Assembly: GCA_044892505.1 (NCBI GenBank)
Contig: CM097882.1
Span: forward strand, 323,268,001-323,332,000
Direction: 5' to 3'
Length of the DNA stretch: 64,000 nt
Source of the DNA: Schmidtea nova
Lineage: Eukaryota
Position numbers and translations under genes: made by a program. A model generated the notes under the pieces. The model did not search any database. It saw only the letters and a program-made list of their open reading frames with translations, and was not told where the DNA came from. Below are positions 7,765 through 57,575 of this stretch, in pieces. The stretch's first letter is position 1. Each line of letters begins with the position of its first letter.

Positions 7765-8005
7765 GTAGGAAGGGACCAAATAGGCATTACACCTTCTATC
7801 GGTAGCCCTTGGACCCCGGAGATATTCGGTCAATCATAGTTTCGAATTTTCGACGTTCACTGATTGCGAATACCCACCCATTTGTAGCATTACCAACGTT
7901 ATAGTGTGACGGGCAACAAGATGGTTATTTCAATGTTTTGTATGTTGAGTTGTTGATGTGAGTCATAGCAACGTCAAGGTCATACTGACGATCAACAACC
8001 CACCA
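7765..8005 (+). mobile_element. 3-prime structured terminal module (E1) of the TG...CA coding-LTR family
   Basis: ACCTTCTATCGGT (7791)...CATTACCAAC...TTTTGTATGT...CAACAACCCACCA end; clearly homologous to 8895-9135. Confidence 0.7.
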
Positions 8006-8894
8006 GAAGATAGAAATATAGATCAATATTATAAAAGTTAGGGTAAATTATCTAGACAAAAAGAGGGGGGGTCCCGAATTTGCTTAAATCCTCGAAACAA
8101 ATTTAATTGGATAATAAAATTTTGAATAGACCGACATGAAAAACTGGTATCAGTCTATACCTTAAAAACTTGTAAACTTCCGATCCGTTCCCAATAACTA
8201 CTGACTCGGCCAAAGTTTATAATATTATTTTAGTTTTATAATTTATTGAATTAAAATTTAAATCAAAATCAGTTATACTGTTCTATTAAAGGGGATCCAA
8301 AACTAAATGATTATTTTAAAATTAAAAAAGATAAAACTTAAAAATTTATTAGTGATGACCAGAAGTGCCGTTAAAGATTGGTAAATCCTGAACCAAATAC
8401 CGTAAAATAGTGAATTTTACCAAAAATCAATAAGTGCACTGGGTCGAGTCGTGAACAAATGATCTGAGTCGATAATATGTTGGGACATGCGTATGGAAAA
8501 CTAGTTATGTTTTGACGTGGTAAGGTATAACTAAAATTGTTTTCTGGGGAATAAATATTTCGATGATCACGATTGAGTAAATGTTCATTTTAGAGGGTGC
8601 TGTTCGAATAAAGTAATACCGGATTATATCTAGGGGTTGGTGAAATTAGGAGACGAACAGTATCTCGAGAAATCTGAAGGACTTTAATACGTTTAGGACG
8701 GATGATTTTATTGATTTTGTTCTGTTTACTATCGTGTTATGTGTATTTCAGATGGATTCTTGTACGAATTAGGTTGTGTAAATGTTTTAATGTTGGAATT
8801 ATCCATTTTGATGTAGAAATAAATTCTAATCGATATAAATTACTGATTTTAAATTGTTGATTAGAATCTTATTGAATGTTCATAGATAAATAGT

Positions 8895-9135
8895 TGGATA
8901 AGGGACAAAATGGACATTAAACCTCCTATCGGTAGCCCGTGAATCCAGGAAATGTTCGGTCAATCATAGTTTCGAATTTTCGACACTCGTTGATTTCGAA
9001 TATCCACATATTTGTTACATTACCAACGTTAAATTGTGACGGGCAACAAGATGGTTAAACTAGTGTTTTGTATGTTAAGTTGTTGATGTGAGCCATAACA
9101 ACGTCAAGATCATGTTGACGGTCAACAACCCACCA
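8895..9135 (+). mobile_element. 3-prime structured terminal module (E2) of the TG...CA coding-LTR family
   Basis: ACCTCCTATCGGT (8921)...CATTACCAAC...CAACAACCCACCA; direct repeat of E1 with scattered substitutions. Confidence 0.7.
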
Positions 9136-9225
9136 ATTGTAATAATTTTTTTATAATTAATATTATATAATTATTATCAATAATTCTCATAATGACTATA
9201 GATCAAAATTTTTTTTTTATAAACA

Positions 9226-9265
9226 ATAACACAATATTTCGGCACGGCCTTTATCAAGTGTGTAT
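9226..9265 (-). ncRNA. Minimal type I hammerhead ribozyme, U3-A8 core variant (PLE pLTR)
   Basis: ATACACAC-TTGATAA-A-GGC(CGT)GCC-GAAA-TATT^GTGTTAT. Stem I is ACAC/GTGT plus ATA/TAT, stem II is GGC/GCC, and stem III is the palindrome ATAT. It lies 90 nt downstream of the PLE stop codon. Confidence 0.8.
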
Positions 9266-9356
9266 CTTAATCGTTATATTAACTTAATCCTAAATAGTAA
9301 CCTTAATTATTTAGTTTATATTTTATAATGATTTTATTGGATGAAAAAAATTTATT

Positions 9357-10880: not shown

Positions 10881-11414
10881 AGGACAAAGACTAAGGTATA
10901 AACATTAAATTTATATTAAAATTCATCTAAAAAATAATTATAAATAAATTATCACAATTACCAAAAACACTTTTAAATGAAATATTAACAGTATCTAATG
11001 AAAAGGTCATACTATGAAACATACACATGAAGAATAAGAAACTAGAAAAAGGAAAAATTTTGACTTAAATATATTTAAATTAATACACTTATATTATTAA
11101 AATTGATATTTAATAACAAGATCATTAATTTTCTTTCATTGCTCAATAATATTCTATATAGATAGTCATTTATTCTAAATTATTTTATATTTAAATATAG
11201 TTCAATTATTGTTTAGAATTTAGAAAATTGCAAGTTTTTGATTTTCAATTTTTATACTGATTTTTAAAGTAATTTAATATTTTAAATATTCAATAAAAAT
11301 TGTTTCACTTTATGTAATGCTTCAAAGAAAGATTTATTTTAAAATAAATCTATATATACTGTGACTTACATTTTGAAATAAATAATAATCTACATTTCAA
11401 ACAAAGTCATTACA

Positions 11415-12772: not shown

Positions 12773-14660
12773 TCAGTCAATAGAATGAGCTTCTTGGGTG
12801 TCGACGCATTTCTTCTTTAGGTGCCTTCTTTTTATCGGGCTAATTTGTTTTCGTTTCTGCGCTCTTCCGTGGGTTGGACTAGGCGTGTCTGACATTTCAA
12901 GCACTTGTACGGGCGGTGGGAACCACTTGTCTAGCGTTAATGGTCGTATTTAATTCGTCTACTCATTTTGGACGAAAGTTTGAGTCAGGTATCGTTGGCA
13001 ATTCATCAGGGCGTCTCTCTCTAATTGTAAATCAAGGATACTTTGCTTTGCTCTGCTTAATCGATTATTTACCACCTTCGTTTCGTGGGGTGAAAAACAG
13101 CTATTCTCTAACTGTAATACCCTCCGCTTTAAGTTTGCAATTAAATTTGGCTTTCACTGACAACCTCTTCTCGTTTCGATTCTTTTCGTCACACATTTGT
13201 CTCCGGATAGTGTCGAATTCTGTCCAGAATAAAATAACAATACATCCAACACTTCTATAATTTCTCCTCGGTTTGTTTTCACACTCTCACTATCTTCGGT
13301 TTCCCATTATCAGATGGTGTTATTGCTTTAAATTGAACAAAATTTCACGCCCCTCTATATTTCGCCGCTGTTTACAACCTATTACAACTTACGCCTACTC
13401 TGACTTTCCAGTTACGTCAAACTTAATATTCAACTATTTGATACATCTAATATTTACAATCTTTTATTCGAAACTATTCTAATTTCACCAGAGTTAAATA
13501 AAAATAATTATTATAACTGAAAATATTTAGAACAAAACTTTTGTACGATAATATATTACTAAACGACAATTTAAAAAATTTTAAAACACAAATTCGGATA
13601 TCAGTCTACATTATTACATTTCGATCATGCGAATCGGTATCGGTTCAATACTCCTCTGCCTCGGTGGGCTGAGGAAAGAGTCGGTGGTTTCATCGAAATA
13701 GATCGGCTGGAAGATTAACTTGCCCATCGCAATCAATTCTGACATAAACAACATTGTTATACTCCGGTACTTCGCTTGGCTATTCGATGAAGTACTTTGG
13801 GCAGGAAATCGGGTAGGTGATGTCCACATTTATGGAACATTTAGCATTTCTGTGCAAAAATTTTTTTCTGGGCTGTCCCGGTGAAGACTGGATCTCGGTT
13901 CCATTCCTTCTCGCATGAAAGTACTCAGATGCTCCTCGAATATTTCCTGAGCTAGCGATGTCGGAGTGTCCTTTAATGAATAAGTAATTGTGATAGCGGG
14001 ACTCTGTTGATTTGGCATCTTTGGTTGATTGATGAGTTCGTCCACTCCTAGTTCCAGCGCAAATCTTAGCCTCGAGATTGAACATTTCGGAATTTATCTG
14101 TATCGACAAATAAGTTGTTCATAAATAATTACAAATAATGCTCCTCTACCATTGGAATCTATGTGGGTCGGTATAGAAAAATATTTTTTAATGCTCTAAT
14201 ATTGTCGATGGGAATTTTATCAGATTTGTTTCGTCGGTAGAATTACCTTTATAAACGCTCTGCGCCTACCCTGACTATGTGGCCTAATCGTGATATGATG
14301 GATTGAATTTTCATCGCGTTTCTATCGCATTTCCGCTCTATTGTTCGATTTCCTTTATTTAGAAATATAATGATTTTACGGCGGCAATTCACAAAGAAAA
14401 AATTATTTTCCACGCTTTTACGTTCTCGATGTTTCTCGGCAGAGGTACTAATGTAACTGACAATAGGTTTCCGGCCGTTCAATAAGTGTTTTACGGTAGA
14501 ATAATCGGGCGAATTTTAGGTAAACATTGGGTTTTCGGCAATTTATAGTAGACAATAGATAATAAATTTTTCGAAGAACAATGGGGTTTCCTGTCGAAAT
14601 TTTATGAACAACGGGTAGAGATTTTCGTATGACCATAGGTTTCCGGTAGAGATTTTTCAA
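12773..14660 (-). mobile_element. Degenerate copy H of the coding-LTR family (ORF1 and ORF2 remnants; ends not resolved)
   Basis: ORF1 remnant 14045-13614 (SLAQEIFEEHLSTFMREG). ORF2 remnant ~13195-12773 (CFSPHET..LQLERDALMNCQRYLTQTFVQN..IRPLTLDKWFP..QKRKQISPIKRR). Repeated GAAACCYATTG motifs at 14460-14660. Confidence 0.8.
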
Positions 14661-18439: not shown

Positions 18440-18659
18440 AAGGACCTTAGGAAAGAGAGAGTAGCTAGACGCGAAAGACCTATCGACAGCAAGGAGTAGT
18501 TTCGACAGCGAAGCTCATCTGCTCACTGGATTCTCGCCTCCATGTACATTACCAACATAGCTTACCAAGGAGTAACTGGGTACATGGGTGAAGTAGATCA
18601 CATTTATGTTGCGGTATGGGTTGTATCCATTCCTAAAGCCAATAGTAAATTTTTTAACA
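18440..18659 (+). mobile_element. 3-prime structured module (D) of the coding-LTR family, ending TTAACA at a gap
   Basis: GACCTATCG (18477), GAGTAG..GCTC, CATGTAC-ATTACCAAC-...-GTACATG, TTTATGT. Confidence 0.7.
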
Positions 18660-20731: not shown

Positions 20732-21950
20732 TGTTAGTGTTGGGTAATCGGGTTCTTGTTTTTCGGCTTGGCACTATAGTTATGGTAACCACGGCGCCCT
20801 TCATGAATGGTTATTCCCCTCACTTCATTGATGTAGTCATAATTATTCTCCAGTAACTATGCTGATGATGTACCCGGCGGAACGTAAATCAATGAACAGG
20901 TGAGCTTTTTCTATCAAAACAATTCCTCACTGTATCCTCCTTTCATTTTCCCGGTTGGCGATAGAAGGCCTTACGCCACACTTTTGATCTTATCCAACAC
21001 TTCTCCATTCACCTCGGTTGTGTGATTTAAGCATGTGTCTACTATGATTATCGGTAACCGAACTTTACAACGATACGAAGAGTATCAATCATATTAATTC
21101 ATTTATTACATACTAAATACTACATTTAGGAATGCACTAAGGACACAATACATAAGTCATTTATGAAGTCCTTTTATGATAAGACCAGTTATTGATCCAG
21201 CACTTCACTTTGAAGTTGGAACACTTAAGTTTCTCGTCACTGAAATATTTTTCTCTCAATGAAAACACCTGCTCTTCTAATTACACATATGCTCATGTAA
21301 TTTTTGTAGTATCTATTGTGTTACAAATGTGTTATAAATTCGTTTATTCTTTGGTCAATATTTATTCGGATCGGATCATCAAATGTTTCTTTTAAGAAGC
21401 TCATCAGATTCAGATATTTCCACGTGGAACAAGTCACATCAATTTGTAGAATATTACGCGGGTCAAATTTATCTACCCCCGAAAAGAGATTTTCCGATAA
21501 TCTCGGCTGGATCCTTCATTAGCATTTATGTCATCTTAGTAATTCCCCTTCTCTCGTACCGTCATCGCCGAGTTCTTGAATTTTATCAAATTGATTTGTT
21601 ACTATTTGACTAGAAAAATTACCTTAAAGATTCGAACCAAAACTCCATCCGAATGTGAACCTCTCGACAGTCCAAGAGGCCACCAGATCTTCACTTTTCG
21701 TTAGATAGGACTAGACAAAACAAAATCATAAATAAAATAAAAATTCAAACAAAAACTTACGTGCATTTTGTTTTTCCTCTAAATCAATTACAATCAGCAA
21801 AATTTTCAACAAATTGTGTCACTCTCAAATCACGATAAAAGGCTTGTTGACGTATTATTTGAAATGGATTTGACTAGTTCTCAGTTCTAGTCGTTTCGTA
21901 ATGAATCTTCCTCAGTCTCTACTATAATTCTTGATAAAAGGTTGTTATGA
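20732..21950 (-). mobile_element. Degenerate copy K of the coding-LTR family
   Basis: Terminus CCCAACACTAACA at 20732; structured module 20830-20990; ORF2-like KYFSDEKLK near 21240; GTAAGT donor near 21760. Confidence 0.7.
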
Positions 21951-22628: not shown

Positions 22629-23090
22629 AGCTACCCAGCCACGCGATCCCAATGAGTTGGAATCACCAAACTGCAGAGTCAGAATTGGGATTCAAACCGT
22701 TTCATTTAAATATTCTGATGAGAAATTAAGATTGTTAAGCCAGGTTGGTTAAGTACAATTGGAAGATTGGCTCTTCCTATTCTTAAACGACATGGTTCTT
22801 TTGGAGTATAAACCGCCAAAAATGCAATAATGAATAATCAAAAAATATTTCCAATTTTGAAAAGATGTGTTGGTGACTTTGTTTTGGAGTAATCTTTTCT
22901 CTCTTGATTGTAAGTGATATGACTGATTCGCCTTCATGAAAGAAATATGTCTCCTCACTCAACAGAAGTGTTGGTAATGTTGTAATGTGATCACCAACGA
23001 GAAGAGGAGCTTCGTTAGCAGAAATAATCCTCGTTGCGCGCTTTTTACGGATTCGTCTCGGTCGATAGAAGACCTTTGTGTTTACCTTAT
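22629..23090 (-). mobile_element. 3-prime part of copy F of the coding-LTR family
   Basis: TCTTCTATCG (23063-23073), ACGAG/CTCGT stem with GAAGCTC, and CATTACCAAC. Its terminal ~110 bp is duplicated at 23767-23878. Confidence 0.6.
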
Positions 23091-23762
23091 CCGGCTATTG
23101 TGTAAAGCTTATACGCCTCAACTTTCCCCTATCTCAAATATAATATTCACAGTACTCATCTGAGTTGCTCGTCTTATTACGGCATATAATATTATTACTA
23201 GATACACGTTAACACACCGAATTATATTCAAGGCTGTCACAGAAATAACATCTCTGAAATTTATAAGAAATAAAAGATGTTATTTTAAATTGTGCACCAG
23301 AAATTACTCCTCATAAAGTTTATCAAGTTACTGGAATTAACATTAAATACTTGATTTTCCGTCATAAATGTATGCTCTGTGGACTTGAAAAGCTAACCAC
23401 TTCACTGAGTGTTCATATAGATGTCAGTATTGCACCGATACAAAAGAAAACAGGCTATAAATATTTTTATCAATAAACTAAACCTGCATAAAAAAGTATT
23501 ATAAATTAACTTGTTAATTGTTTGTAAATAACTTATTCAAAGATATTACCTGTTGAGTATAATGAACTAATATTGTAAACTTGATAAATCGGGATGTTTT
23601 GACAGTGACTGAGAGAGCTAAAGTAACAATAATTGTCTTTGATTCCGCTGAGAGTATTGCTTCCCAAAAACAGTGTTCTCATTATTATTTATTCATTCTT
23701 TCTCATATGCATTTCACATGTAAAATAGTTCACCATAATTAAAATGAATTGTTTTGAATCTT

Positions 23763-28183: not shown

Positions 28184-30945
28184 TGTTGGGTTAGCGCAGT
28201 GGTCAGGAACAGTTAATAAGCAAGAACAAATAAATAAAATTAAATAATTAACAAAAAAAGTAAAGAAATAAAAGAAACGGTTAAAGAAAAAGAAAAACAA
28301 TAATCAAAATGTTAATATTACTATAAAAGAAAATGGTAACGGAAATAAAAGTACAAAATCCGTTAAAAAAGTACGAAATTATGAAAAAGGAAATAAATTA
28401 AAAAAATAAATATTTATTTATAAAAATAAATCAAAAATTTAAAAGAAAAACAAGGAAGTAAATATAATTAATCAAAACATATTAAATCAAATAATCTGGC
28501 CAATCAAAGGCTCAGATCGATTCTGATTGGCTGATTGAGTACTGAAATTAGTATAAAAGAGACGCTCAATTAGTTGAAAATAGAGAGACACAAAACGACA
28601 AAAAACTGTTTTTAACATAAACAAACACAGTTTTTTGAAACCGTTTCAACTCGTAGCAGACTGTCAACTTTAACCATTTGAACTAATATCTCACTAATCA
28701 ACTTTGAACTGTTCATTGTTTACTAAACCCAACTTGACAGAATTCTAACTTTATTCAAATTGTGTATCATAAGAATATTATTGTAAGTATTTGTGTTTCG
28801 ATTGATAAATATAAATTTTAAAAATTACTAATGCGTTTCAATTCTTGCATTCATTATGTTTTATTCGAAAGGAAATTTTTTTGAAGTTGTGGAGGCCATT
28901 CAGGTCGCCAACTTTGCGATGATTCAGCCATTAATTTTGCCTTTGGTGTAGAATGGATAGCGGGATCGTCGGCAATTGGTATTAAATAATTGTAAACTGT
29001 TGCAGTAGCAGGGTTCCGGAATTCTAATGTCACTCAGTTAATTCCTTTTGATAGATTCAAAGATGGTTGTTACTAGACTTCAGTTTTGACTAGCTTAATA
29101 ATTATAGAGCCGATTTAATTTAATAATCATAACTTAATAATTCAGTGTAAATCCGTTGGATACAGTTTTGTTCATTTTCCATATTCGCCTCTTCACTGAA
29201 CTTCAGATTTTACTCTACAGTGTTGACGCGCAAACAGATTTAAAATAAAAATCGAGAAAAGGAGTTTTAGACACCACACTGGTAGTCCACCATAAAATTT
29301 TCATGCCTCTCGCTGACTAATGAAAATCTATAACACTGAGTACTGTAATCATTTAGAGAATCAGACGAGCGAAACGCACTCTAAATTAAAAGCATTCGGT
29401 CACTTACCTCCCATGAGATAAAGTAACGACTGACAATATTAATTGCATTCCCTCGTATAGTACTCGCGATAAATAGCAAGGTATGCGTAGTTCGAACACT
29501 CCACAGCTCAGTGACATCACATCGTAACAGAGAACTCTGTGGGGTATGGAAATTTCACTTCGTCGCACGTAAAGTATAGTATTAAAACCTCCATTGAATC
29601 CACATATAACATTAATTGAAAACCCATTAGTGAGATAGACATCTGTTAATTATGACTAAAAGTAAGCGCGTAAACAAGATGAATAAACTCGAATAGATAA
29701 ACTCTAAAAACCCATTAGTCGACTGATGAGATATAGAATTCGTTAAGTGCATGCAATTAAATTAAATTTTCCTATACTAGTGTCAAAAATTAATAATAAA
29801 ATTTCTACTGATTGTGGTAAAGGGTCATTGCATAATTACGTCACGCCAAAAAGACCATTTTGACTAACCCACCCACCCTGTCACTCTTGGTCACATTTCC
29901 CTAGACCCACACACCCCCAATCGTGACGTCATTTTATTGTTCACGAAATGGGGGTAGCCTAGTGGTACCATAAGCCATTCAAAATATAAATTTACGGACA
30001 GTTGAAACAGATTAAAAAAAATTTAATGATTCAAACAAGTAAAATGAACTTATGGATTTTAAAATTATTTCGAGCACTTCATTTAAAATGTTTAAGCAAG
30101 ATCATTTTAAAATTTTTTTAAAATCGTAGCTTTATTAGTCATAGTTGTCCAGTCAAAGTATCAGCATCATTGTAGCATAGGAAGATTGTTGTAATTAGAA
30201 CTTTTTTGGTCTAACCGGTCCATTATAAAATACAACTAGAAGTGACGCCACGTTCAGCTCAACTCACTCACCCACCCACGTCACGTTTCGTCACGTTTTC
30301 AAAAAATTGTAAACGGTACCTTACCCAGAAATTTGTAGCGGACGACATCAGATATTTAATAAGATCAACGACCTTGGTCGAATAGTACCAAACACCACAT
30401 CGAATGGACCGCCAGTAAAGGGTAAAAAGTGAAAGAGGATCAGCTCGCAGAAGCGACAACGAAAGAAAAGATAATTGATGGAAAAATGATGAAATCGCAG
30501 GATGTGCAATAAACTTTTGTAATGCAAATAACGATCATAAACAAATGTATTACAACGAGTTGATTCTTCTTAATTTATAATTAAACAAAACTTAAATAAT
30601 AAAATAGGGCATATTGGACAAAGCACATTTAAACGGTAAGCTAGGAGTTCAGCGAACGCACTCTAAATTAGTGACTAGTGATAAAGGGTAAGATGGGATT
30701 AGATAAAGACCTTCTATTGGTCAATAAGGAACCCGCGAGAATGGTAGGATCGGGAGTAGTTTTTGCAAAGAAGCTCACCTGCCGATTCACATTCGCCTGT
30801 CATGTACATTACCAAGTTAAGTACATAGGGTATTTACAGGTACATGGACAGTAAGCTTTTTATGTGTTGTAGTGCGACCCAAGATAAACAAAATTTTATA
30901 AAATTAAAAAATACAAAAATTAAAATAAGCACTAGCAACCTAACA
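28184..30945 (+). mobile_element. Complete copy C of the coding-LTR family (2762 bp)
   Basis: TGTTGGG...CCTAACA with TTTT on both flanks; CTGATTGG and TATAAAAG at 28523-28560; GTAAGT donor at 28783; ORF2 remnant 30305-30475 (NCKRYLTQKFVADDIRYLIR..KRISSQKRQRKKR); structured module 30680-30870. Confidence 0.8.
29821..29945. mobile_element. Possible PIF/Harbinger-type MITE remnant inside copy C
   Basis: TAA|AGGGTCATTGCATAATTACGTCAC...CACCCACCC...CGTGACGTCATTT; a related partial copy lies at 30240-30300. Confidence 0.35.
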
Positions 30946-31744
30946 TTTTTATCATTTCCTTTCTCTTTAATCTTCATCTGTTCCCATGATGTCGGCTATT
31001 ATCTAACTAGTTCGATTTTTTAAGCTCCAACTTTTTTCGGTTATGGTGTCTTCAATCCCATTTTGTATATTAATAAATTAGATTGCAGATGATTGCAGAG
31101 TAGTTAGGTATATCAATGTTCGATAAATTTAACACGTTAAATGCCACAATGTTACAACAAATGTATCGGACAAAAGTATTTTTCCTTTTTTGGCTTTTGA
31201 ATTAATTTTTATGAACAAAATCAAAGTCAAAGTCAAATTTATAAAAATTAATTATTATTTTTTAGAGATAAAATTTGTTTCACGTGGCGTGGACGAACAA
31301 AATAAGTGTGAGACAAATATTGTCTCACATGACTTTCAATGTATTAACTAATTCTTATTTTAAATTTCTTTATGCAAAAGATTTTCCTAATAAATTCAAT
31401 CAATTATAGTTCTATCTTCCTCTATCATATTTTAATTTTGGTTTTTCTGTTATGAATGTTTGCGCCCAACCAATGAAAAGTCTTAAGGGACGGACTTGAA
31501 TGCATATCGCAATTTTCGACTAAATAAGACCAACCGCAAATATCCATTCAAAATATCCATTTTTCAATGACAAAGTATGTGTCATACACATCTGTCTATA
31601 CAAATTACTGCATAAATTTAATAAAATCAAAATTACCATAATTTTATTTTTACATGAAGAATTCTTTCAATTCTCGTCGATATTATCTTTAGCTAAATAA
31701 TGTGGAATAGGACGAAGCTCATGAGCTCTTATTTATCTTTAATA

Positions 31745-31975
31745 TGTTGGTGTATGGGTTATTAAAATACTCTGTTACTAGGGTTACGACGACCATGACA
31801 CTTCATGAATCACATGAATTACTCATAACTAACTACTCCTCGGCAATTATGTTGGTGATGTACGCGATGGTATGAGAACCGATAAGCAGGTGACTTTCAC
31901 TACCAAGACTAATCCTCATTATATTCTTCTTGCGGGTTCCTGACTGCCGATAAGTCTTACGTCGAGTCTTCATTA
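31745..31975 (-). mobile_element. 3-prime structured module (I) of the coding-LTR family
   Basis: GACTTATCGG..GGAACCCG..GTCACCTG..GTACATCACCAACATAAT...GTTATG; terminus CACCAACA at 31745. Confidence 0.7.
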
Positions 31976-32821
31976 TTATCTGCATATGTATTGTGGGTTC
32001 ACACTTTGATTCAGAAAGTTTACTTAGTCTGCGTTAGGAGCACATATCAACTATAGCCTTTAATTGCATATAGTATGAAGCATACTATAAGGTCAGCCCT
32101 TCCAAAATCCCAAGCATCATTAGCAATTCACTACAGCAACCATGGCAATCAGTTTATGCATCCAGACTTTCTCAGTTGGAAAATTAAGAACAGTTATAAC
32201 CTATTTTACAGCTGTCGTTGCACTGCGTGCGTACACCAAGTTATTTTTTCATGTATGTTTTTAATAACCGATAACTAAATACTGAGGTTCGGAGATTTTG
32301 TTGTACACTTTAATTATGATTTTATTTAAAGAGAAAAAGTTTAAGTTTAAGAAGAAAAGCGATATTTTTTGTTCGTTTAGGCTATCAGTAGCCTTCCTCT
32401 GCCTTATCGCTACACCAATGACAGCAATTCAGTTCGATAACATTCAAATCTTTATTAAATTTCACATGTTTGTTTGTTCGTTAGAGTCAAATTTTCTAAA
32501 TTAATTTTGATTTACTTTGATTTTATCTATTTAGTTGAAATGTTTCATACAAAAAATTGTAAGATTTTAATATTATTATAGTATATTATTTTAATATGTT
32601 GGGGTTCTATAAAATATTATTCTAAATAAAATAATGTAAATTGATTAATGCATACAAATTCGATCAATTCCTCACAGTAGAAGCACACAATCGGTCCAGA
32701 AAAAAAACAATAAAAGCACATAGATTCGTGCATACTCAGCTAGAGAAATTATTTCTTTATTTAAAACCTGATTGGAACAATAAGCGACTTAAATAATTAA
32801 TCAAAAATTTATTAAAATTTA

Positions 32822-40180: not shown

Positions 40181-43100
40181 TTTATTCCCCCATAATTTTA
40201 TCGTCAATGATATTACCCTAATTAACATTGAAATTAATTAAAATAAAAAGATTATTCAAAATTTCATGTATTTAAAAATAATTAATTAATTTTCTCAAAG
40301 ATAAAATAGAAATAAAATAGAAATATTCTTAAAAGATTAAAAAAAGAAAATTACTCAAAAAGGAAAAGTTACTGATGCAATCTTAACTTTTATTGCAGCA
40401 TGTATAATGGAGTGGGGGTAAAAATACTAAATGTTCCGATATCGGAACACTGGGCAAAAAGGGGTTAATATAATATTTTTTTGAAGTTAAATGCGTTATT
40501 TTTTGTTATATTCATGTTCTTTAAATTTTAGTAATTTAAAATCAATAGAATTTTTGGAAGTTGGAGATGGTTTACTGGGTCGCCAGCTTCGCTGTAGTCC
40601 GACTTTTAACTTTCGAGTGTAGAGTGGATGGTAGAGCAACCGACCAAAGATAACAGAATGGTAAAACTAAATTAATGAATATTGAAATCAGTGGTGGTAT
40701 GGAACGTCAGTTTTCCACGTCAGCAACTAGGATTAAATTTTAGTAAACTATAACATAGTAAAATCACTATAAAGGAATAGAGATAGGAACCTGCGTACGC
40801 TACTTGGTTATTACCTGAGGTAACCCCGGTAGTAGGGAGAAATAATCTGGTTAATTCGAAGCTTAAAAATTGATTATCTATATGAGATTGGGGAAAATCT
40901 TTCAGATTAAAATCCATTAGTTGACGAGAAAACAATTGTTTAATACAGTCCATTAGTAGGTGCTCAACATTTTCGTTGAAAATCCATTAGCGACGGGTAA
41001 AAGTTAATTAACTAAATTCATTAGCCGGGGAAAACTTCTATTCGTTTAGGACAACCTAAATTGTTGACTGAAGTAAGGAAATTTAATAATGAAGTCAAAA
41101 TATCCATTAGTTAATGATTGCGTAATTCGTCTGTCGTAGTAGGACAGTGTAAGGAAATGATTGTACTTAATTGATTGACAGATAAAGTCTGTTTTTTAAA
41201 ATAAATTATGATTAAATAATTTAAAGAAATCTGAGGCCTAAAAATATGTCATTAATGTAAAAATTCAATATTTATTTCCCACTAGCATTAGAACTGACGA
41301 TGGCACAGATATACGATCAAAAATATCATGAGACCCAAGGGACAGGGTCCACAAGAATCATTTCAATCATAAAAAAGGGTTCATAGAAAAATAGTATGAA
41401 AACTTTCTGGTAATGGCGATGCCCTTAAAGACAAATATTTCTACCAAATTGTTACAATAAATATTCGCCGAGCATGAGGCGCACTTCAGACGAACGGGGA
41501 GGCGCCGAGCTTTAGCCTCCATCGTGAAAGTCCCGACCACATCGTGTGACATAGGGGACCAGAATGACCTCATCGATTCTGAATACGACTATCCACGGGA
41601 CACTCCAAATTATGCTGTTTAAAACGACGTACCATTGACTGAGAAAGAGCATATTTTCACCTGCGGAGATGAATGGAGTGAAGGACAAACTTACCCGAAT
41701 ACGCCAAAGTAATGAAGATCTAAAGATGGAATTGGAAGCTATCAGGATAAAGCTGCGCAATTGCAAACGTTATTTAACGCAACGGTTTGTTGCAAATGAT
41801 TTGAAAGAGGTAATTCAACCCCTTACTTTTTCGAAATGGTATCCGACCACTGTCTAAACGGAGAATTCTGACAAGGTACAGGAAGAACCGAGAAAGATGC
41901 CCAAGAAACGCAAGAGGATTAGTTCTCAGAAACGACAAAGGGCGAGAAAACAACTGATAGCCAAGTCAAGCGAATCCGAGAGTGAACAATGATAAACATT
42001 GATATACTCTGTTGAGTGATTGTTCTAATTATATGTATGATATTGTGCTTTATTTGGTTATTTGTGCGAGCTTTGAATAAATTAAAATCAATTGAAATCA
42101 ATAAAGATCAACGAAGAAAATGTACGACAACTCAGAGATAAGTTTTAGACTGTCTTGTGAGATAAACACACCTTGAATGAGTGACCCGTGAAAGGGTGAG
42201 TAGGATAAAATTGTGAAAACCTTCTATCGGTCATTAGGGAACCCGTGAGAACGAATGAATCGGGAGTAGTGTTAATGCAGAGGCCAACCTGTCGATTCAA
42301 ATTCGCCTGACGTATGCAGTACCAACGTAAGTACAAAGGATATATACGAGCATACGAGAGGAAAGCTTTTTATGTGTTGTGTTGCGACCCTAGACGAGTA
42401 AAGATAAATGTGATTAAATTGCATAAATATTTCAAGCACACAACTGCTGGGCCAGCCAACACACAAAATCAAACCCTAGAAACAGGAATAAATCAATAAA
42501 ATTAACTTTTTTTTCTCGGATCACTGAGAAATCTGAAAATAAAATAATAGAATCATTAAATCAATTAAAAACATAAGAAATAATACTTCAGTTTTGCGAG
42601 GAACAACATACTTCAACGATTCTAAAATAACTAATAAAACAATTTTAAACACTCGAGAGTTCAATTAAGGGGAAAACAAAAATAATATTCAGTAATCATA
42701 ACGAATTAAAAACAACCAAGTACCAATTATGAGCCAACAGATGAATTCTGATTGGTGAGGACTACAAGCGGAATGAGTATATAAACAGTGGTTATTTAGT
42801 CAAAAGGAACACCTTTTTCACCTTGTGTAGAATTTTCACATTGAGACAACTGTTTACTTGTAACTACGTTGGAGGCGAAAATAAAGGTATTGTTGTAATT
42901 TGATGTTGTTAATTATATTCATCCTCATGATATTTTCTAAGCTCAGTATGATGGTAAGGGCACGTCCCGTAAATCTAACGTCTCGACGGGCGATAATGGG
43001 CCTCCCGACCGACACTCTTCGCAGTGTTGGCGGTGCGGCGTACGATAACTAAAATGAACGGGGAAGGGGAAAGATCGCACATTGGGGCATCGAAAGACAT

Positions 43101-45375: not shown

Positions 45376-45945
45376 ATGGAAGTACTAAAATCATGCATAG
45401 ACACCGACGAGCGACGATAGTTATATCGACGAATTCACCTCCTCGAGGGTAAAATAAATCGCCAGGATCTGGAGCTGGAGGAATTGAAAAGAACTTGGTT
45501 CAACCCTGAAAAAACAAAAGCGATATTTAAGAGTCGAGACAGAGTGGAAAGGGCGCTGGAGGAGCAGGCCCGGGAAACTGCGGCGACCAAACTAGAGTTA
45601 AATTGTTGCCTACGATCCTTAACTAGCGAATTTCTAGAGACTCATCTAAAGACGCAAATACGAGAAAACACATTTGAACGTTGGGTCCCAACTCGACGAG
45701 AAACCGTAGAAACATAGACCGAGAATCAACCCGCCGCAAAGATGCCTAAGAGTGTCGAAACAGGGGTAGCGAGGGACATGGTCAGCGAACCCTTCAAGGT
45801 AAAGAAACGCAATCGGTTAGGAGCCAAAAGGCACCGAGAGCGAAGGGCACTCGCGAAGAGAATAGGGATCGAAGTAGATCTCCAGAGTGGGTTAACCGAA
45901 AACCAATTAGTCAACGTGATAAACACTAGTATCTTTTTGAATTAA
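45376..45945 (+). pseudogene. Copy B ORF2 (coiled-coil/Arg-rich family; 2 in-frame TAG)
   Basis: tatAG|ATG start; WFNPEK, AATKLEL, FERWVPT, RNRLGAKRHRERRALAKR and LTENQL all match copy G ORF2. Confidence 0.8.
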
Positions 45946-46302
45946 ATAAAGGTTTTGTGTTAGTTCATGCGTTTTGTTTGTTTAGCGTATGCATGAGAAA
46001 AGAGAAGGATGTGGAGAGTGAACGAATGCACAAAGGGTGAACATTCATAGAAAGGGACCGAAAGAAAACCACACGAGACCTATCGGTAGTGGTGGACCTG
46101 TAGCCTTAATGGGGGAATAGTAGTCTTTCGACTGCTCTCCTGACCTATTAAGCTACAACGCTTAGTGCAGTACCAACATGAGGCGCAATTAGGGGCAAAT
46201 CATGGGCACGAGCGAGGAAATGTTTTTATGTTGGCCAGGTGATCCTAATCTTTCCAACCAAACACACCTGTGTTTGAACAATATCAACCAACACAACTAA
46301 CA

Positions 46303-51370: not shown

Positions 51371-52508
51371 TTAAAGAAGCATTTCACCTTTCTCAGCCAA
51401 CAAACGCAATCTTTTGTCTGAATATATTTGTCCCGCTCCACTAAATAGTTGTTCATTTGGGACACTTAAAGCTGGAGGGGATAAATATTTCCGCGCAAGA
51501 ATAGATAGTGCACCGAATTGATTCAGATTTTGGCGCCAACACAAGTATGGGTCTTCGTTTCGAATTAATAATGGCGCTAACAAATAATTATCAATCATTT
51601 TCAACATTTCTGCCGCTTCATTTGCTGATTCAACCGATTCACTGGTAGGAAAATGATTCCATAGCCAAGATTTTGCAAGTGGTGCAGATTTCCGGACTGC
51701 ATTTTTTTCATTTACTGTCGTCACAGAAATATCATCCTTTTTATCTACTTTAATTGCTGCCACCTCTTCCTTCAACCAAGTTTTTGCCATCAATACGGTT
51801 TCATCACTGTCAAATATCCGATCTTTGAAACGAGGGTCGAGCACCGTGGCCAGAACGAGTGTTTTACTTTTTGCAGTATCTGAAAACCTCGTGTTTCTCA
51901 AAACATTCCGTTATATAATGTCCAGTAAAACTTAAAAGTGAAATTCCAGTTGACGGATCAGACCATACATCAGTGGTAAACCTAATATCTTTCTCGAAAT
52001 AAATGAGTGCCTTTATTTTTGATTGAACTTTTCGGTACATGTTTGGAATTAATTATGTTGCAAAAAATTTTGGGCTGGGTAACTTATATCGCTTTTCTGC
52101 CTTCTCCATCACACGTCTGAACCCAATATTTTCAACCATGGTGAATGGTTGCGCATCAACGCAAATCATTTCTCCTATTAATCTGTTCCAAGAGAGTGCT
52201 CTTGATTCATTAAAATCCCAAGCGATTGAGCGATCAATTACTTCTGATATAATAGGTTGGTATGATAAATGTCCAGACGTAGATTCCACCCTAGATGTTG
52301 TTTTTTTTGTCGTTTTGAACTTTAAATATTCGATTTCATGCTTATATTTCAAATGACTTATCAAATTAGTTGTCGAATAGGACTTAGGCTCCTGCCCACC
52401 CCGAGAAACTGCCTCATTGCAGACTTAGAAATTTGCTTTGCTGACATCTAGAGAATTAACGTCGAAAACGGCCCAAATATTACTGGTCATCATCGATGGT
52501 GTTGGCAT
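51371..52508 (-). pseudogene. BED-finger hAT transposase (ZBED1/ZBED4-like) with catalytic-core deletion
   Basis: IWAVF..VCNE..STTNLISHLKYKH (BED); QPFTMVENIGF; FTTDVWSD; ATVLDPRFK; LARKYLSPPALSVPNEQLFSGAG. Confidence 0.9.
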
Positions 52509-53393
52509 GGTAAATTTCCAATTGTAATTAAATAAATTTAATCGAATTATTGATTTAAAAAATTAACGGAAACCAATAATGATTAATTTCAAAATGTAAA
52601 CAACCCAGACATTCTATACGGTCTAACGATATATGTTTTCCATTATCATCAATATATAGAACAGAATTTTCACATATATAATTATAACGGTGATTGTTTT
52701 TCACTATATATTTTGATTCTACAGCATTGATAGTAAAAACCATGGTCGCCGGATCATATTATTTGAAGTTTATGTCGTTAGATAATGCAAATGTAGTATT
52801 TTCATTTACCCCACTTAAAAAATATCGGTATTATACCTATCGGCACATATATTTCCGGCCGATACCGATATTGCCGATATGAAGATGTTGGGGTTGTGGA
52901 GGGGTTGTTAAAGGTGTATATGCATGTCAAAGTTCTAGGGATTCTCCATCCACAGCCCCACATAACTTTATCGTCGACACGCGTATGCCCTTGACTATTC
53001 CCTACTAGTCAAGTTGGTACTGCATACGGTGGTGGAAAAATGATGGGCAGGTGAGCTTTGTTGCCAAAACTACTCCCCATTTATCTTCCCTCGGGTCCTT
53101 GCTGCCGATAGAAGGTCTTACGCATTTACATTCTATGGATGTTCGTTTCCCACTGAATTTTATACTACATATCCTTATGATCTATCACACGCTTTTCCCA
53201 ATTGCACTCTCCTTCGCTGTTCTACGAGCCTACGAAACTCCCGCTGCTAAGTCACGGTCGGTGGAGGTTTTATGACGCGATTTTTATTTCTACGATTTAC
53301 CGGTGTTGTCTTATTTTATTTATTAAAAGCACACGATGAGAGACAAAATTAAAAAAAAAAAACACTTTTATTAAAACAAAAAAAAACAGGTTG

Positions 53394-53999
53394 TTATTTG
53401 ACATTGACGTTTTCGTACGCAAACTCCAGGCTAATCTCCTGAATCAACTCTTCTTCGGTCAAGGTGTTTAAGTGGTGGATTTGCTCGTCCAGTCGCTTCG
53501 CAAATTCTCGGCGACGACGACGCTGTCGCGATCCCATTCGGTGTTTTCGAAGCTCTTGGTTTAGGACAGGTGCTGACGCCATTGTTCTCGATGGATCACT
53601 GTGAAAAGTAGGCAAATCGTCCGTTACAAGAGTCGGGGCCATGATGATCCCATCTTCCGTTCCGCATGCGACATCTTGATAAGTATTTTGCGTCCAGCGC
53701 TGAGCGGTAATCGGCCGGATTAACGCGCGTAATTCGGAGTCGATATAACTTCTTGTTACTGCATTTAGGCAATTACGCAGTTCTCTCTGGACGGCGTCGA
53801 GTTCTAATTTAGTTGCGGCCAGTGCTTCCTGCATTCGCTCGAGTTTTTGCGATTGACCCTTCATTTGCTCGGGTGAGAACCACTTCGCTCTCAGTTCATC
53901 ATTGGCTACCGTGAGTCGCTTGATCTGCCGCTGCTGGTCCCTCAACTTCCTATCTTGGATTTGTCCCATGACTCTCCTAGAGTTTTCTGAAGTCGGCAT
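53394..53999 (-). CDS. Novel 201-aa coiled-coil protein with Arg-rich motif (family ORF2)
   Basis: Intact ATG ORF with heptad-like N-half and RKHRMGSRQRRRRREFAKR. Homologous remnants occur in copies A, B, C, H and probably K. Confidence 0.8.
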   Translation of the reverse strand: MPTSENSRRVMGQIQDRKLRDQQRQIKRLTVANDELRAKWFSPEQMKGQSQKLERMQEALAATKLELDAVQRELRNCLNAVTRSYIDSELRALIRPITAQRWTQNTYQDVACGTEDGIIMAPTLVTDDLPTFHSDPSRTMASAPVLNQELRKHRMGSRQRRRRREFAKRLDEQIHHLNTLTEEELIQEISLEFAYENVNVK

Positions 54000-54336: not shown

Positions 54337-54813
54337 CTATCCATCTTCGGTCATTTTCCCTCGGTACGAAAATATCGATCTGATTTGTAGATGAGAGCTG
54401 ATTCCAGTGGAGTTGGGTGAGGCTTGCTGGAGACGGGTCCTCTCGGCTTCCCGAAGGGGTCGTATTGCCGTATGGAAAGTGAACCCTAACTCCTTGAATG
54501 TGGAGGCTGGAATGAACCCCCAATAAATCACACAGCTCGGGAATCCCCGTTTATCTAACATCAGGACGAACCAGGCGGCGTGCCATGATTCGAATTCCTC
54601 GTCTGGGATGATTGGCCAGCTAGCGCAGCCTCGGTACCACACGTGATGCCGTGGGTGGTCCCATACTGTAAAGGGACATGCTGTTTCAAGCTCTCGGCGC
54701 CATGCCCACATTTTTTGATGTATTTGTTGCAAAATCTCAAATGGAGCCGGCTTTAATGGGCTGATTCGGGCTCGTTCTCGTCGTTTTTTGATGGTGAATC
54801 TGTGTTTGGTCAT
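54337..54813 (-). CDS. Novel 158-aa Trp-rich protein with basic N-terminus (family ORF1)
   Basis: Intact ATG ORF 5 nt after a tttAG acceptor. Homologous remnants occur in copies B and H, and possibly A. Confidence 0.72.
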   Translation of the reverse strand: MTKHRFTIKKRRERARISPLKPAPFEILQQIHQKMWAWRRELETACPFTVWDHPRHHVWYRGCASWPIIPDEEFESWHAAWFVLMLDKRGFPSCVIYWGFIPASTFKELGFTFHTAIRPLREAERTRLQQASPNSTGISSHLQIRSIFSYRGKMTEDG

Positions 54814-55760
54814 GGTACTAAAACGATGATGAATTTTATAATAGTTAACAATTTAAATCAATGATTAATTATATTAGATGTTATCTCTCATCGTGATGCC
54901 TTTATTATTTGCCTTCCCCTTAGACCTTAACTGAAATCAAGAAAAACTGTTGCTCGTTACGGTATACATTACTCTCGCGTCTGCTTAGATTTATCTATTT
55001 ATGATCAATAATATAGTCGAAAATTGGTGATTTGTCTGCGTGGACATCGAAACATTGGTATCTCAAAACGGAAACTCTCTCACATCATGTATCTCCTAGC
55101 TTACTCGGAAAACGCCCCTTTCGTATCAAATGCGGTCGACATAATTTTCCAAGGTTTATTAGGTGTTTATTTAGCAACTGTGCTGTGGTGAGGGTGAAAA
55201 ATTGTGCCTCCTCACAGTCAAAAATTCTTTCCTATCCTACATCGTTAGACTTTATCCGAAAATCGTCTCCTCTGTAGCTAAAATGATTCGAAAAATAATT
55301 CCCCGGATTTGTTGGGTGTCCCATGTGCAAATTCTGTCAACTACACAAAAAAGTCATATTTTGTTATTCATTACTTTACCGTGTGTGGAGCCCTCGAGCA
55401 CCACGCCACGGACGGACACCTTGGTAACCTAAAGCTCCCAGTCGGCGCAAAATTAATATGATCATTATATAGTTTAAATGCAAACATGATAATTCACAAT
55501 CAATAAATTATAATGTGATAACATATGATTACAACAATATCAATAATAAGCATAAATATAACAAAAATACCTAAATTGAATCCCAAAAATTTGTTCAGTT
55601 AAAATCGGTAAAACAGTGATCGTCTATTGAAAATCAGTCTTGTTAATCTCAACTTAGTGGTGATCTCAGTCTGAACAATCTAACAATCTAATGTGAATCT
55701 AACAAAGTCGCAATCTGAACAAAGTCTAAGTCTAAATTTTAGTCTGATTTTATGAAAAAT

Positions 55761-55805
55761 CTGATCAGTATTTATACTGATCAGTCGTGTCTAGACCGAC
55801 CAATC
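55761..55805 (-). promoter_or_regulatory. Pol II core promoter of copy G (CCAAT box plus TATA inside an inverted repeat)
   Basis: Minus strand CTGATTGG...CTGATCAGTATAAATACTGATCAG. The equivalent CCAAT/TATA spacing recurs in copies B and C. Confidence 0.6.
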
Positions 55806-56638
55806 AGGTTTGGCCAGTTTCATGGTGGGTTTGATTATTATTTTGTTGATCTAATTAATTTTTATTTTTTAGATTGGATTCTTTCTCGGTGGTCTGGGTT
55901 TCAAAAACAATTATTCAATAACAAGTACTTTTTATTTTGTTTTAATTATTAATATTAATATTTTATTTGTTTTTAGATGTCTCCTGGGCCAGTTAATATT
56001 TAGAAATGTCTTTAATTCGTTTATTTTTATTTATAGTTTGTTCCTAATTTATCTATATTTTAACTATATTACTCTTTTCTTTTAACTTATTATTCCCCTT
56101 TTTACCTTATTTTTTCTCTTTTTTGTTTTAATTATTATACTTTTATTTCACTTTTCCCTCTATTTGGCTGGCCCAACAAAGATATCGGCACGCCGATATA
56201 TCGGTAGACGTCTATAAATATGTTTATTTATTTTTGTTAATTATTAAATGAATCAATTAATAATAACGGTTTAGTGAAAGTTTAGTAACATAACTCTTAT
56301 GAAATATATCTCAGCAAACATCTCATACAGAAATTCATTCCAATGAGTAAAATGATCAACGAAAATCAAGAACAAAGTTAAATCTATTAATTACGTATCT
56401 TGCAAATATATTATAGATTTTAACTTCCGAGAAATAAAATTCTTTTATTGTAGTATAATTGAAATTTATAAACTTAATTTGTAATATATTAAAATCAATT
56501 TCGGAATCTAATTCTTTAATTTAATCAACTTTTCACATTGTGAATTTAAGCAACTTAGAATTTTAGCGATATTGTTGGGCTAAACAAAGAGCCCAAAAAG
56601 TTAATAAAGGAATATTGGGTTATAAATGAGTAGTCGGT

Positions 56639-57246
56639 TGGTATCTGACTCCGGTGTTCTTTTGTTCACAAAATAAATTAGACTCAACACAATTATTTTT
56701 ATTTTTCAATTCAATCACAACAATCTAAATCACAGAAAGTTACAATATTTGTCTGCACTCTTACGTTAGGGTAGAAAACCAAATAGGAGATCTCCCTTTC
56801 TGGTACGTAGAGAAAATTGATCAATCGATATTCAATAACTTTCAATTACCGTTTCTGATTCCTTTTTTTCTTTAATTTCTCCACTCAATTCTTTAAAATT
56901 TCTTCGACCAATCTGGCAATCTCGGCAAATTGCTTTCTGTTTAAATAAAACCTTGTCGCGTGGTCATGTCGCTCCATTAATCAATTAAATTGGGAGTTGC
57001 AGCTAAGTGAGTTTGCGGCTTCTTTCCCCGGGACACCCTTCAATTAGTCCATTTATTTTAATTAATAGATTTATTGACGCCCCGGGTTTCCCACACCGCT
57101 CGGGATTCCCATTAGCTCGGGTTTTCTATAAGGTAATTAATAATATTAATTAATTTGTATTTTTTAATATTTCTTTTTAGGGGCTTCTTTCAATTTTATA
57201 TACTTGTATTTGAATTCGTATCATCATATTGCATCCTCCCATACCA
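56639..57246 (-). mobile_element. 608-bp LTR with TGGTAT...ATACCA termini preceded by a polypurine tract
   Basis: Minus strand TTTAGAGGGGGGAC|TGGTATG...GTCAGATACCA; internal CAGATTGG and TATTTAAA. Confidence 0.65.
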
Positions 57247-57480
57247 GTCCCCCCTCTAAATCTTTATTTTTAAATTTTTATAAAATTTTAATTAATGTTT
57301 GCACTTAAATTATTATTTTTCCTATTTTTATTGATTTGTGCATTTTAAATTTATTTTCTGTTTATTTTAACAACCCCAGCAGGAGTGAAAAATTAAAATT
57401 AAATACTAATCATAGCTGAACAAATCTAAATGGACCTAAAAACTAAACCTTGTTAATAAAACATAAAGGAATAACAATAA

Positions 57481-57575
57481 TGGTGGGTTGTTGACCGTTA
57501 ATATGACCTTGAAGTTGCTATGGCTCCTATCAACAACTAAACACATAAAACATTAGTTTAAACCATCTTGTATCT
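57481..57575 (-). mobile_element. Partial terminal fragment (J) of the E1/E2 subfamily
   Basis: CAAGATGGTTTAAACTAATGTTTT...GTCAACAACCCACCA matches 9045-9135. Confidence 0.85.

What the first reader, a model, noticed from the sequence alone, without database searches (positions are those of the whole stretch)
7765..57575. Conserved three-domain RNA structure with compensatory changes at the 3-prime end of 11 family copies
Copies at 7791, 8921, 18477, 20969(-), 23073(-), 30709, 31957(-), 42219, 46077, 53119(-) and a partial at 57575(-) are very divergent in sequence but keep the same architecture. D1 is GGG..RTAG..CCTTCTATCGG..GGA(A)CCC. D2 is a closing stem (GAATCG/CGATTC, GGATCGG/CCGATTC, ATGGG/CCCAT, ACGAG/CTCGT, CAGTGA/TCATTG, TATTCG/CGAATA) around GAGT-AG-hairpin-GCTC-ACCTG. 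D3 is P1 (CGTATGC/GCATACG, CATGTAC/GTACATG, GTGC/GCAC), an AKYACCAA junction and a P2 hairpin with a GG-containing loop, followed by TTTATGT. In copy K the junction CC is TC and the loop offers GA, hinting at a 2-bp pseudoknot. The stems are seen directly. Function (packaging or dimerisation signal, protein response element, IRES, or catalytic RNA) is inference, and I cannot match it to a known ribozyme class.
Basis: partly seen in the sequence, partly recalled or inferred. Interest (0 to 1): 0.88.

Follow-up and report, generated by a model that had tools for sequence, protein, structure and literature searches.

The report
Structured 3-prime tail of retroposons
Ten scattered repeat copies in this AT-rich eukaryote-like DNA end in the same folded RNA module of about 250 bases, whose stems are kept by matching changes on both sides; it is most likely the handle by which a reverse transcriptase picks the RNA it copies, which is a known kind of signal in a family that is not yet described.

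Summary
They are only 49-58% alike by alignment column, yet the spacing of the conserved blocks is almost fixed.

- **Stems:** the D2 closing stem, the D2 hairpin and both D3 stems (P1, P2) carry compensatory changes. 76% of cells are paired, against 37-47% when partners are slid, and no shuffle of 500 reaches the observed covariation score.
- **Held-out test:** a covariance model built from four copies finds the other six and nothing else in the window.
- **Extent:** the module is larger than described. A fourth domain pairs the TTATGT block with a terminal CCAACAY motif.
- **Known families:** no Rfam family matches, even at E 10, and no tRNA is found.
- **Element types:** five copies have a small coiled-coil ORF, with no relative in any search, upstream of the module or where it would lie. 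Six copies are the module alone. One copy is cut short at its 5' end.

My best reading is a cis-acting 3' tail of a retroposon family that is copied by target-primed reverse transcription, with the enzyme supplied in trans. The only RT in the window is an unlinked Penelope-like element. I found no support for a ribozyme, an IRES or the proposed pseudoknot. This looks like a new family of a known kind and is of moderate interest.

The parts
7770..8005 (+). Copy A: short unit made of the module alone (236 nt), ending CAACAACCCACCA
   Evidence: 85% identical to B over exactly this span, with unrelated flanks
8900..9135 (+). Copy B: short unit made of the module alone
18450..18659 (+). Copy C: lacks the D1 hairpin; D2, D3 and the start of D4 are present; the rest is cut off by the assembly gap at 18660
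   Evidence: no ORF2-like remnant upstream
20737..20994 (-). Copy D: module, TTCATGAA subgroup, terminal CCAACAC; P1 poorly kept
22867..23098 (-). Copy E: module, TCATGA subgroup, terminal CCAACAC; D3 poorly kept
30684..30945 (+). Copy F: module of a long element; 73% identical to H over this span only
30215..30382 (+). ORF2-like remnant upstream of F (a fragment only)
   Evidence: profile E 5e-14
31744..31983 (-). Copy G: module, TTCATGAA subgroup, terminal CCAACAT
42194..42462 (+). Copy H: module of a long element, terminal CCAACAC
41639..41854 (+). ORF2-like remnant upstream of H (a fragment only)
   Evidence: E 7e-35
46050..46294 (+). Copy I: module of a long element, terminal CCAACAC; fold z-score -3.2
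45421..45942 (+). ORF2-like gene of I, broken once by a stop
   Evidence: E 2e-43
52885..53146 (-). Copy J: the best-kept module. D1 53085-53114, D2 53043-53080, D3 52982-53028, D4 52885-52967. Fold z-score of D2+D3 is -5.9
53394..53999 (-). ORF2 of J: open, 201 aa; long helices plus an Arg-rich stretch; no relative found in any search
54337..54813 (-). Upstream ORF of J: open, 158 aa, no relative in the window or in Pfam; whether it belongs to the element is uncertain
57481..57571 (-). Copy K: 5'-truncated copy of the A/B subfamily (last ~91 nt, D4 only) with the same CCACCA end
12776..13153 (-). ORF2-like remnant L (at least one stop) with no module downstream of it
   Evidence: E 7e-21

Best explanation
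The module is the cis-acting 3' tail of the RNA of a retroposon family. It is about 235-275 nt long, spans domains D0 to D4, and is read on the strand given in the parts list.

**Shown.**
- The same fold sits at the 3' end of two kinds of copy. Long copies carry a small coiled-coil ORF. Short copies are the module and nothing more.
- One copy keeps only the last 91 nt.
- Stems D2 and D3 change by compensatory substitution, while their internal loops and junction (GAGUAG ... CAC CUG, and A(U/G)UACCAAC) stay fixed.
- A terminal stem pairs UUAUGUKG with CAACAYA and so brings the 3' end next to the folded core.

**Inferred.** A reverse transcriptase binds the conserved loops that the stems present and starts cDNA synthesis at the 3' end held by D4, by target-primed reverse transcription. 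Any RNA that carries the module is then copied, and copying that stops early leaves 5'-truncated copies. No family member in the window encodes an RT, so the enzyme would be supplied in trans. The basic coiled-coil ORF2 protein may coat or deliver the RNA.
For: - **Real family with near-fixed spacing:**
- **Compensatory changes in four helices:** one search gives 75.8% of cells paired against 37-47% slid, 38 double-change cells and 0 of 500 shuffles. One search gives the same.
- **Alignment-free check:** each copy's own stem arms pair better than arms taken from other copies, for the D2 closing stem (p about 0.001) and P1 (p 0.0006-0.01).
- **Strand:** G-U pairs number 45 against 24 A-C, and the ORF2-like genes lie upstream on the same strand in F, H, I and J.
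- **Retroposon signs:** the 3' end is constant. A, B and K all end CCACCA, and six of the other seven copies carry terminal CCAACAY 49-86 nt after the TTATGT or TCATGA block. K is 5'-truncated. Copies lie in both orientations.
- **Module-only units:** A and B share both ends and have unrelated flanks.
- **Most conserved part:** between F and H, only the module is alike at the DNA level.
- **Preservation tracks the ORFs:** J, the copy with open ORFs, folds best (z -5.9).
- **Terminal stem:** 8-18 bp in nine of the ten copies tested.
- **Precedent:** LINE ORF2 proteins bind a cognate 3'-tail stem-loop (PMC4176376), and the R2 protein binds its structured 3' UTR (PMC11194090).
Against: - No RT or endonuclease gene is linked to any copy. 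The only RT among 148 open pieces is an unlinked, 5'-truncated Penelope-like element on the other strand.
- I saw no clear target-site duplications by eye.
- There is no poly(A) or tandem repeat at the 3' end.
- Only nine independent sequences come from one window, and no relative was found elsewhere.
- Five copies fold no better than shuffled sequence.
- D1 and D4 are conserved in sequence rather than covarying.
- The structure was derived from members of the same set it was tested on.
Confidence: 0.55

Rival explanations
1. The module is the binding or packaging site for the element's own ORF2 protein (coiled coil plus an Arg-rich helix). On this reading it marks the RNA for RNP assembly rather than for the polymerase. 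This overlaps with the best explanation and could be true alongside it.
For: The ORF2-like gene is the only coding part shared by the long copies, and it lies 100-280 nt upstream of the module. The structure model shows long helices and a confident helix across the Arg-rich stretch.
Against: Six copies carry the module without the ORF, and no ORF2 remnant lies near them, so any binding would have to act in trans. The protein matches no known RNA-binding family.
Confidence: 0.15
2. The module is an RNA-processing or stability element. It could be an undescribed self-cleaving RNA, or a block to exonucleases, that sets the 5' end of the module-only RNAs, which are then copied back into DNA.
For: A and B start at the same point about 25 nt before D1, at a purine-rich block (GATAAGGG-like) that is also present in the long copies. 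The core has invariant junctions held by variable stems.
Against: No ribozyme, exonuclease-resistant RNA or tRNA-like model matches at E<=10, and ARAGORN finds nothing. Cutting there would separate the ORFs from the tail. The common start rests on one subfamily of two copies.
Confidence: 0.08
3. The module is a DNA-level signal. It could be single-strand DNA hairpins or protein-binding sites at the end of a DNA transposon, such as a rolling-circle element whose end carries a hairpin and a CTAG-like block.
For: The D4 loop holds a conserved YCCTAG-like block. Hairpins in single-stranded DNA would also be kept by compensatory change.
Against: Copies run 40-60 nt past that block to a shared terminal motif. 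K is truncated at its 5' end. G-U pairs exceed A-C pairs on this strand. I saw no transposase or Rep/helicase domain linked to any copy and no inverted terminal repeat between the two ends of A or B.
Confidence: 0.05
4. The module is a dispersed family of genes and pseudogenes for a lineage-specific small structured RNA. On this reading it is not a mobile-element tail, and the long copies are chance fusions.
For: The short units are 236-260 nt long and highly structured, with no poly(A).
Against: Four deeply diverged long copies all place the module after the same ORF. There are eleven copies in 64 kb of otherwise transposon-rich DNA. No Rfam small-RNA family matches.
Confidence: 0.05

Closest known systems
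3'-tail stem-loop of stringent-type LINEs and their partner SINEs (L2 clade, e.g. ZfL2; PMC4176376)
   Same: Both are a structured RNA at the extreme 3' end, shared by longer and shorter dispersed copies. In both, stems vary while loops are kept. Copies are 5'-truncated, and recognition would be by the copying enzyme.
   Different: This module is about 250 nt with four domains instead of one short stem-loop. It has no short tandem repeat at the very end. No RT-encoding member has been seen. The short units have no tRNA-, 5S- or 7SL-type head.
R2 retrotransposon 3' UTR (PMC11194090)
   Same: Both are a multi-helix 3' UTR of a few hundred nt whose fold, more than its sequence, is recognised by the element's protein and positions the template end.
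   Different: R2 sits in a fixed 28S rDNA site and encodes its own RT. This window holds no rRNA hit and no linked RT, and the copies are scattered in both orientations.
HeT-A of Drosophila telomeres (PMC5537684; comparison from general knowledge)
   Same: Both are retroposons that carry their own non-enzymatic ORF and a long 3' UTR but no RT, so they depend on an enzyme supplied in trans.
   Different: HeT-A is telomere-specific and polyadenylated, and its ORF is Gag-like. ORF2 here matches no Gag family.
Penelope-like elements and their non-autonomous retrozymes (PMC4209133, PMC11167929, bioRxiv 10.64898/2026.07.22.740005)
   Same: A PLE supplies the only RT in the window. PLEs also give 5'-truncated copies and mobilise small structured non-autonomous RNAs.
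   Different: The PLE signature is a hammerhead ribozyme in a repeated terminal region. No hammerhead is found anywhere in the window. The module is not part of the PLE copy, and the copies are not tandem.

Membership tests
Stringent-type LINE/SINE 3'-tail recognition RNA | Lies at the 3' end of a dispersed retroposon whose copies are variably cut at the 5' end | tested here: met
   The 3' ends are constant, K keeps only the last 91 nt, and copies lie in both orientations
Stringent-type LINE/SINE 3'-tail recognition RNA | The same tail is shared by an RT-encoding element and by short non-autonomous partners | tested here: inconclusive
   The tail is shared by ORF-bearing long copies and module-only short copies, but no member with an RT is in the window
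Stringent-type LINE/SINE 3'-tail recognition RNA | Stems kept by compensatory change, with conserved loops | tested here: met
Stringent-type LINE/SINE 3'-tail recognition RNA | Short tandem repeats at the very 3' end (a feature of L2-clade tails, from general knowledge) | tested here: not met
   The ends are CCACCA or CCAACAY with no tandem unit
Stringent-type LINE/SINE 3'-tail recognition RNA | Bound by the cognate reverse transcriptase | not testable with these tools
   No candidate enzyme is linked to the family
R2 3' UTR | Part of an R2 element inserted in 28S rDNA | tested here: not met
   No rRNA match and no linked RT
Known self-cleaving ribozymes (hammerhead, HDV-like, twister, pistol, hatchet and others in Rfam 15) | Match to the family's covariance model | tested here: not met
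   No match on any copy at the gathering score or at E<=10
Known self-cleaving ribozymes (hammerhead, HDV-like, twister, pistol, hatchet and others in Rfam 15) | Self-cleavage | not testable with these tools
   No sequence-based test of self-cleavage is available here
tRNA-derived SINE or tRNA-like 3' structure | A tRNA-like cloverleaf that can be detected | tested here: not met
   ARAGORN finds no tRNA in the window, and no tRNA clan hit appears in Rfam
Penelope-like element terminal region | Contiguous with an RT plus GIY-YIG ORF on the same strand, with a hammerhead motif | tested here: not met
   The one PLE (9360-10904, minus strand) has no module in its own 3' flank. Copy B next to it is on the other strand. 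No hammerhead is found

The most novel reading that the evidence does not exclude
The module could be an undescribed class of structured RNA, possibly catalytic or exonuclease-blocking. On this reading it defines an RT-less retroposon lineage with a private coiled-coil protein, and it is copied by a polymerase of another element class, such as the telomerase-related RT of Penelope-like elements, through a non-hammerhead handle.
Probability: 0.12. Interest if true: 0.75.

Novelty: new member of a known kind. Interest (0 to 1): 0.42.

Why it matters
The module gives a clean natural example of an RNA fold held by selection across deeply diverged mobile-element lineages within one genome. Its invariant loops and junctions point to the likely contact sites.

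It also marks an unannotated repeat family: long copies with an ORF that has no known relative, and short copies made of the tail alone. The covariance model would let annotators find this family genome-wide. If the enzyme partner turns out to be of an unexpected class, the family would show how a non-autonomous RNA borrows that enzyme.

Tried and rejected
- **RNAalifold on a raw MAFFT alignment of whole tails** gave only 8 pairs, because stems of variable length were misaligned. I replaced it with anchor-based tests and a hand-specified structure.
- **Rfam** gave nothing on any copy at the gathering score or at E<=10. **ARAGORN** found nothing.
- **Public collections.** A loose two-block pattern in viral contigs gave only chance matches, which I later used as decoys. 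Two specific patterns in metagenome contigs gave 0 hits and then 1 hit (L120). The same pattern gave 0 hits in viral contigs and 1 in prokaryote genomes (L121). L120 and L121 are both negative with the model, so they are chance hits.
- **ORF2 relatives.** The word-indexed search found none. The profile search of 1.84 billion representatives gave two hits that are internal-repeat artefacts. PDB gave only designed coiled coils, and Pfam gave nothing. No exact-match contig is on record.
- **Structure prediction.** The J upstream ORF gave an unusable model (pLDDT 40). ORF2 is all long helices, so I skipped a fold search as uninformative.
- **Ciliate genetic code** as a reason for the short ORFs: rejected, because the stop in the hAT remnant lies opposite L or F in relatives, not Q.
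- **Further pairings.** D0 with the spacer showed no signal. The outer extension of D2 was weak (p 0.07-0.12), and D1 was not significant.
- **Pseudoknot** between junction CC and loop GG: both are nearly invariant, so there is no evidence either way.
- **Link to the neighbouring PLE:** rejected.
- **Host organism:** the relatives of the PLE and hAT proteins carry no useful names, so the host stays unknown.
- **Target-site duplications:** none was convincing by eye.

**Transparency note.** My scripts printed the bounds of open reading pieces, as an ORF list does.
Full report
**1. The window.** It holds 64 kb of AT-rich DNA (GC 0.20-0.41) with four assembly gaps. There are few long ORFs, no tRNA and no Rfam match at gathering scores. 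The recognisable genes all belong to mobile elements:
- a Penelope-like element (PLE) with an open RT plus GIY-YIG frame at 9360-10904(-), which lacks roughly the first 380 residues of its relatives;
- a hAT remnant at 51347-52424(-), with one in-frame stop in the part that aligns to relatives;
- a pogo/Tc5 remnant in pieces at 58740-59784(-).

Among all 148 open pieces of at least 62 codons, these are the only Pfam domains found. The DNA looks eukaryotic and transposon-rich. The host could not be named.

**2. The observation.** Only A, B and K are close to each other (83-85%). The other copies are 63-73% alike over the core, and mean column identity is 49-58%.

Block spacing is nearly constant. 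The GAGTAGT block lies 22-23 nt before CACCTG, and CACCTG lies 31-35 nt before TACCAAC. CTATCG lies 35-40 nt before GAGTAGT, except in C, which lacks the D1 hairpin.

Two degenerate patterns catch 3 and 4 copies, with none in 100 shuffles. Covariance model R1 (167 positions, 35 pairs) scores the ten copies at 90-147 bits. The next window hit scores 10.9 bits, and the best hit in 706 kb of decoy DNA that shares two of the blocks scores 15.9 bits. Seeds match their own model by construction, so I built R2 from F, H, I and C only. R2 finds the six held-out copies, J at 96 bits and the others at 24-31 bits, and nothing else at E<=1. The family is real.

**3. The structure.** I wrote the fold from J and F and counted it on the plain MAFFT alignment A4.
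- 75.8% of cells form standard pairs, against 37-47% when every 3' partner is slid by 1-3 columns.
- 18 of 35 pairs have changes on both sides.
- 38 cells carry double changes, against 7-25 in the slid versions.
- The covariation score is 0.356, against 0.185 at most.
- None of 500 column shuffles reaches the observed score. The model-fitted alignment gives the same numbers.

By helix, the D2 closing stem has 5 of 7 pairs with double changes, the D2 hairpin 3 of 7, P1 6 of 7 and P2 4 of 5. D1 has none, since all its changes are on one side.

As a check that needs no alignment, I paired each copy's 5' arm with its own 3' arm and with the 3' arm of every other copy. I left B out because it is a near-duplicate of A. 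Own arms pair better for the D2 closing stem (-8.6 against -5.2 kcal/mol, permutation p about 0.002) and for P1 (-8.8 against -5.7, p about 0.0006). The effect is weak for D4 (p 0.04-0.1), because both of its arms are conserved in sequence. It is absent for D1, for an outer D2 extension and for D0 with the spacer.

G-U pairs number 45 against 24 A-C, which favours this strand.

Fold stability of D2+D3 against shuffles is strong for J (z -5.9), clear for I (-3.2) and F (-2.2), and weak or absent for the rest. That pattern fits old copies decaying after insertion. In J the minimum-energy fold reproduces the model exactly.

**4. Anatomy, 5' to 3'.**
- **D0:** a purine-rich GATAAGGG-like block.
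- **D1:** two short stems (CUUC-type with GAAG-type, and CGG with CCG) around a GGAAC-containing loop.
- **D2:** a closing stem of 5-7 bp, then G, a 2-bp AG/CU step, U, and a 7-bp hairpin. The opposite strand carries a conserved 3-nt CAC bulge.
- **Spacer:** pyrimidine-rich.
- **D3:** stem P1 encloses the invariant junction A(U/G)UACCAAC and hairpin P2, whose loop contains GG.
- **D4:** A U-rich stretch and UUAUGUKG pair with CAACAYA at the very end (8-18 bp in nine of the ten copies tested), around a variable loop that holds a YCCTAG-like block. The terminal CCAACAY occurs in D, E, G, H, I and J, 49-86 nt after the TTATGT or TCATGA block. A, B and K end CAACAACCCACCA.

D, E and G form a subgroup with the palindrome TTCATGA(A) in place of TTTATGT and with a poorly kept P1.

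**5. The elements.** A conserved small ORF lies upstream of F, H, I and J, on the same strand. It also occurs once without a module, at 12776-13153(-).
- It is open only in J, at 201 codons.
- In I it is broken once by a stop.
- The copy at 12776-13153(-) has at least one stop.
- F and H keep only fragments.

The structure model shows long helices, a disordered linker and a helix across an Arg-rich stretch. The ORF has no Pfam family, no relative in the 5.8-billion-sequence or 1.84-billion-representative protein searches, and no solved relative beyond designed coiled coils.

J also has an open 158-codon ORF further upstream. It has no relative even within the window.

A, B, C, D, E and G show no trace of the ORF. 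A and B share both end points over exactly 236 nt, with unrelated flanks. So there are units made of the module alone, and K is a 5'-truncated copy of that subfamily. Between F and H, only the module is alike at the DNA level. It is therefore the most constrained part of the element.

**6. How it most likely works.** These findings are the marks of retroposons copied from their 3' end:
- a constant structured 3' end;
- variable or truncated 5' ends;
- copies in both orientations;
- units made of the tail alone;
- stems that covary while loops stay fixed.

In stringent-type LINEs the ORF2 protein binds a cognate 3'-tail stem-loop (PMC4176376). In R2 the protein binds a multi-helix 3' UTR that also positions the template end (PMC11194090). 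I infer the same role here. The D2 and D3 loops and junction would be the contact surface, and D4 would present the 3' end. The enzyme is not encoded by any copy in the window, so it would act in trans. The PLE is the only RT present, but nothing links it to the family. My confidence in this reading is about 0.55.

**7. Rivals.**
- A site for the element's own ORF2 protein. This is compatible with the main reading.
- A processing or stability element that sets the 5' end of the short units.
- A DNA-level transposon end.
- A small-RNA gene family.

None of these has positive support beyond what is listed under each rival. No known ribozyme, tRNA-like or exonuclease-resistant RNA model matches.

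**8. Novelty.** The RNA family is not in Rfam 15. No relative was found in viral, metagenome or prokaryote collections, though these hold little eukaryotic DNA. The kind of signal is well known. I rate it a new member of a known kind. The unusual points are its size (four domains, about 250 nt), the absence of an RT in the long copies, and the private ORF.

**9. Limits.**
- There are only nine independent sequences, all from one window.
- The fold was derived from members of the set it was tested on.
- Copy C is cut by the gap at 18660, and nothing is claimed beyond it.

Noticed in passing
window 9360-10904 (-): A Penelope-like element copy with an open RT plus GIY-YIG frame of about 515 codons. 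It lacks roughly the first 380 residues of its relatives, and no hammerhead motif is detectable near it. It is the only RT-coding sequence in the window.
   Followed up: partly
window 43255-43785: Three tandem copies of a 175-bp unit (97% matches), upstream of the ORF region of copy I. They could be 5' monomers of that element.
   Followed up: no
window 20800-20812, 22917-22927, 31801-31812 (all -): Copies D, E and G carry TTCATGA(A), an 8-nt palindrome in D and G, where the other copies have TTTATGT. A palindrome in a loop could allow RNA-RNA pairing between two molecules.
   Followed up: no
AT-rich unrelated DNA follows it instead.
   Followed up: partly
window 51347-52424 (-) and 58740-59784 (-): Remnants of a hAT transposase (BED finger and dimerisation domain, one in-frame stop in the aligned part) and of a pogo/Tc5 transposase (DDE_1 and HTH_Tnp_Tc5, in pieces).
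   Followed up: partly
window 52800-52885: A palindromic stretch rich in TATCGG repeats lies directly 3' of copy J, on the side facing the hAT remnant. It may be the end of that DNA transposon.
   Followed up: no
window 60767-61014: A fourth assembly gap (248 N) that the finding's note does not name. It lies outside the finding's range and touches no copy.
   Followed up: yes
window 22569-22778 and 23692-23887; also flanks of D and E: Short duplicated segments (up to 98% over 110 bp) lie near copies D and E. They belong to another repeat, not to the module.
   Followed up: no
window 47857-48822 (+): The second-longest ORF of the window (321 codons) has no Pfam family and is low in complexity. 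It is probably not a gene.
   Followed up: partly
window 7803-7855 and 8933-8985 (+): In A and B, the D1 loop (TAGCCC..GG) and the D2 hairpin (GTTTCGAA) faintly recall the A and B boxes of RNA polymerase III promoters, at a typical spacing. ARAGORN finds no tRNA, and I give this no weight.
   Followed up: partly
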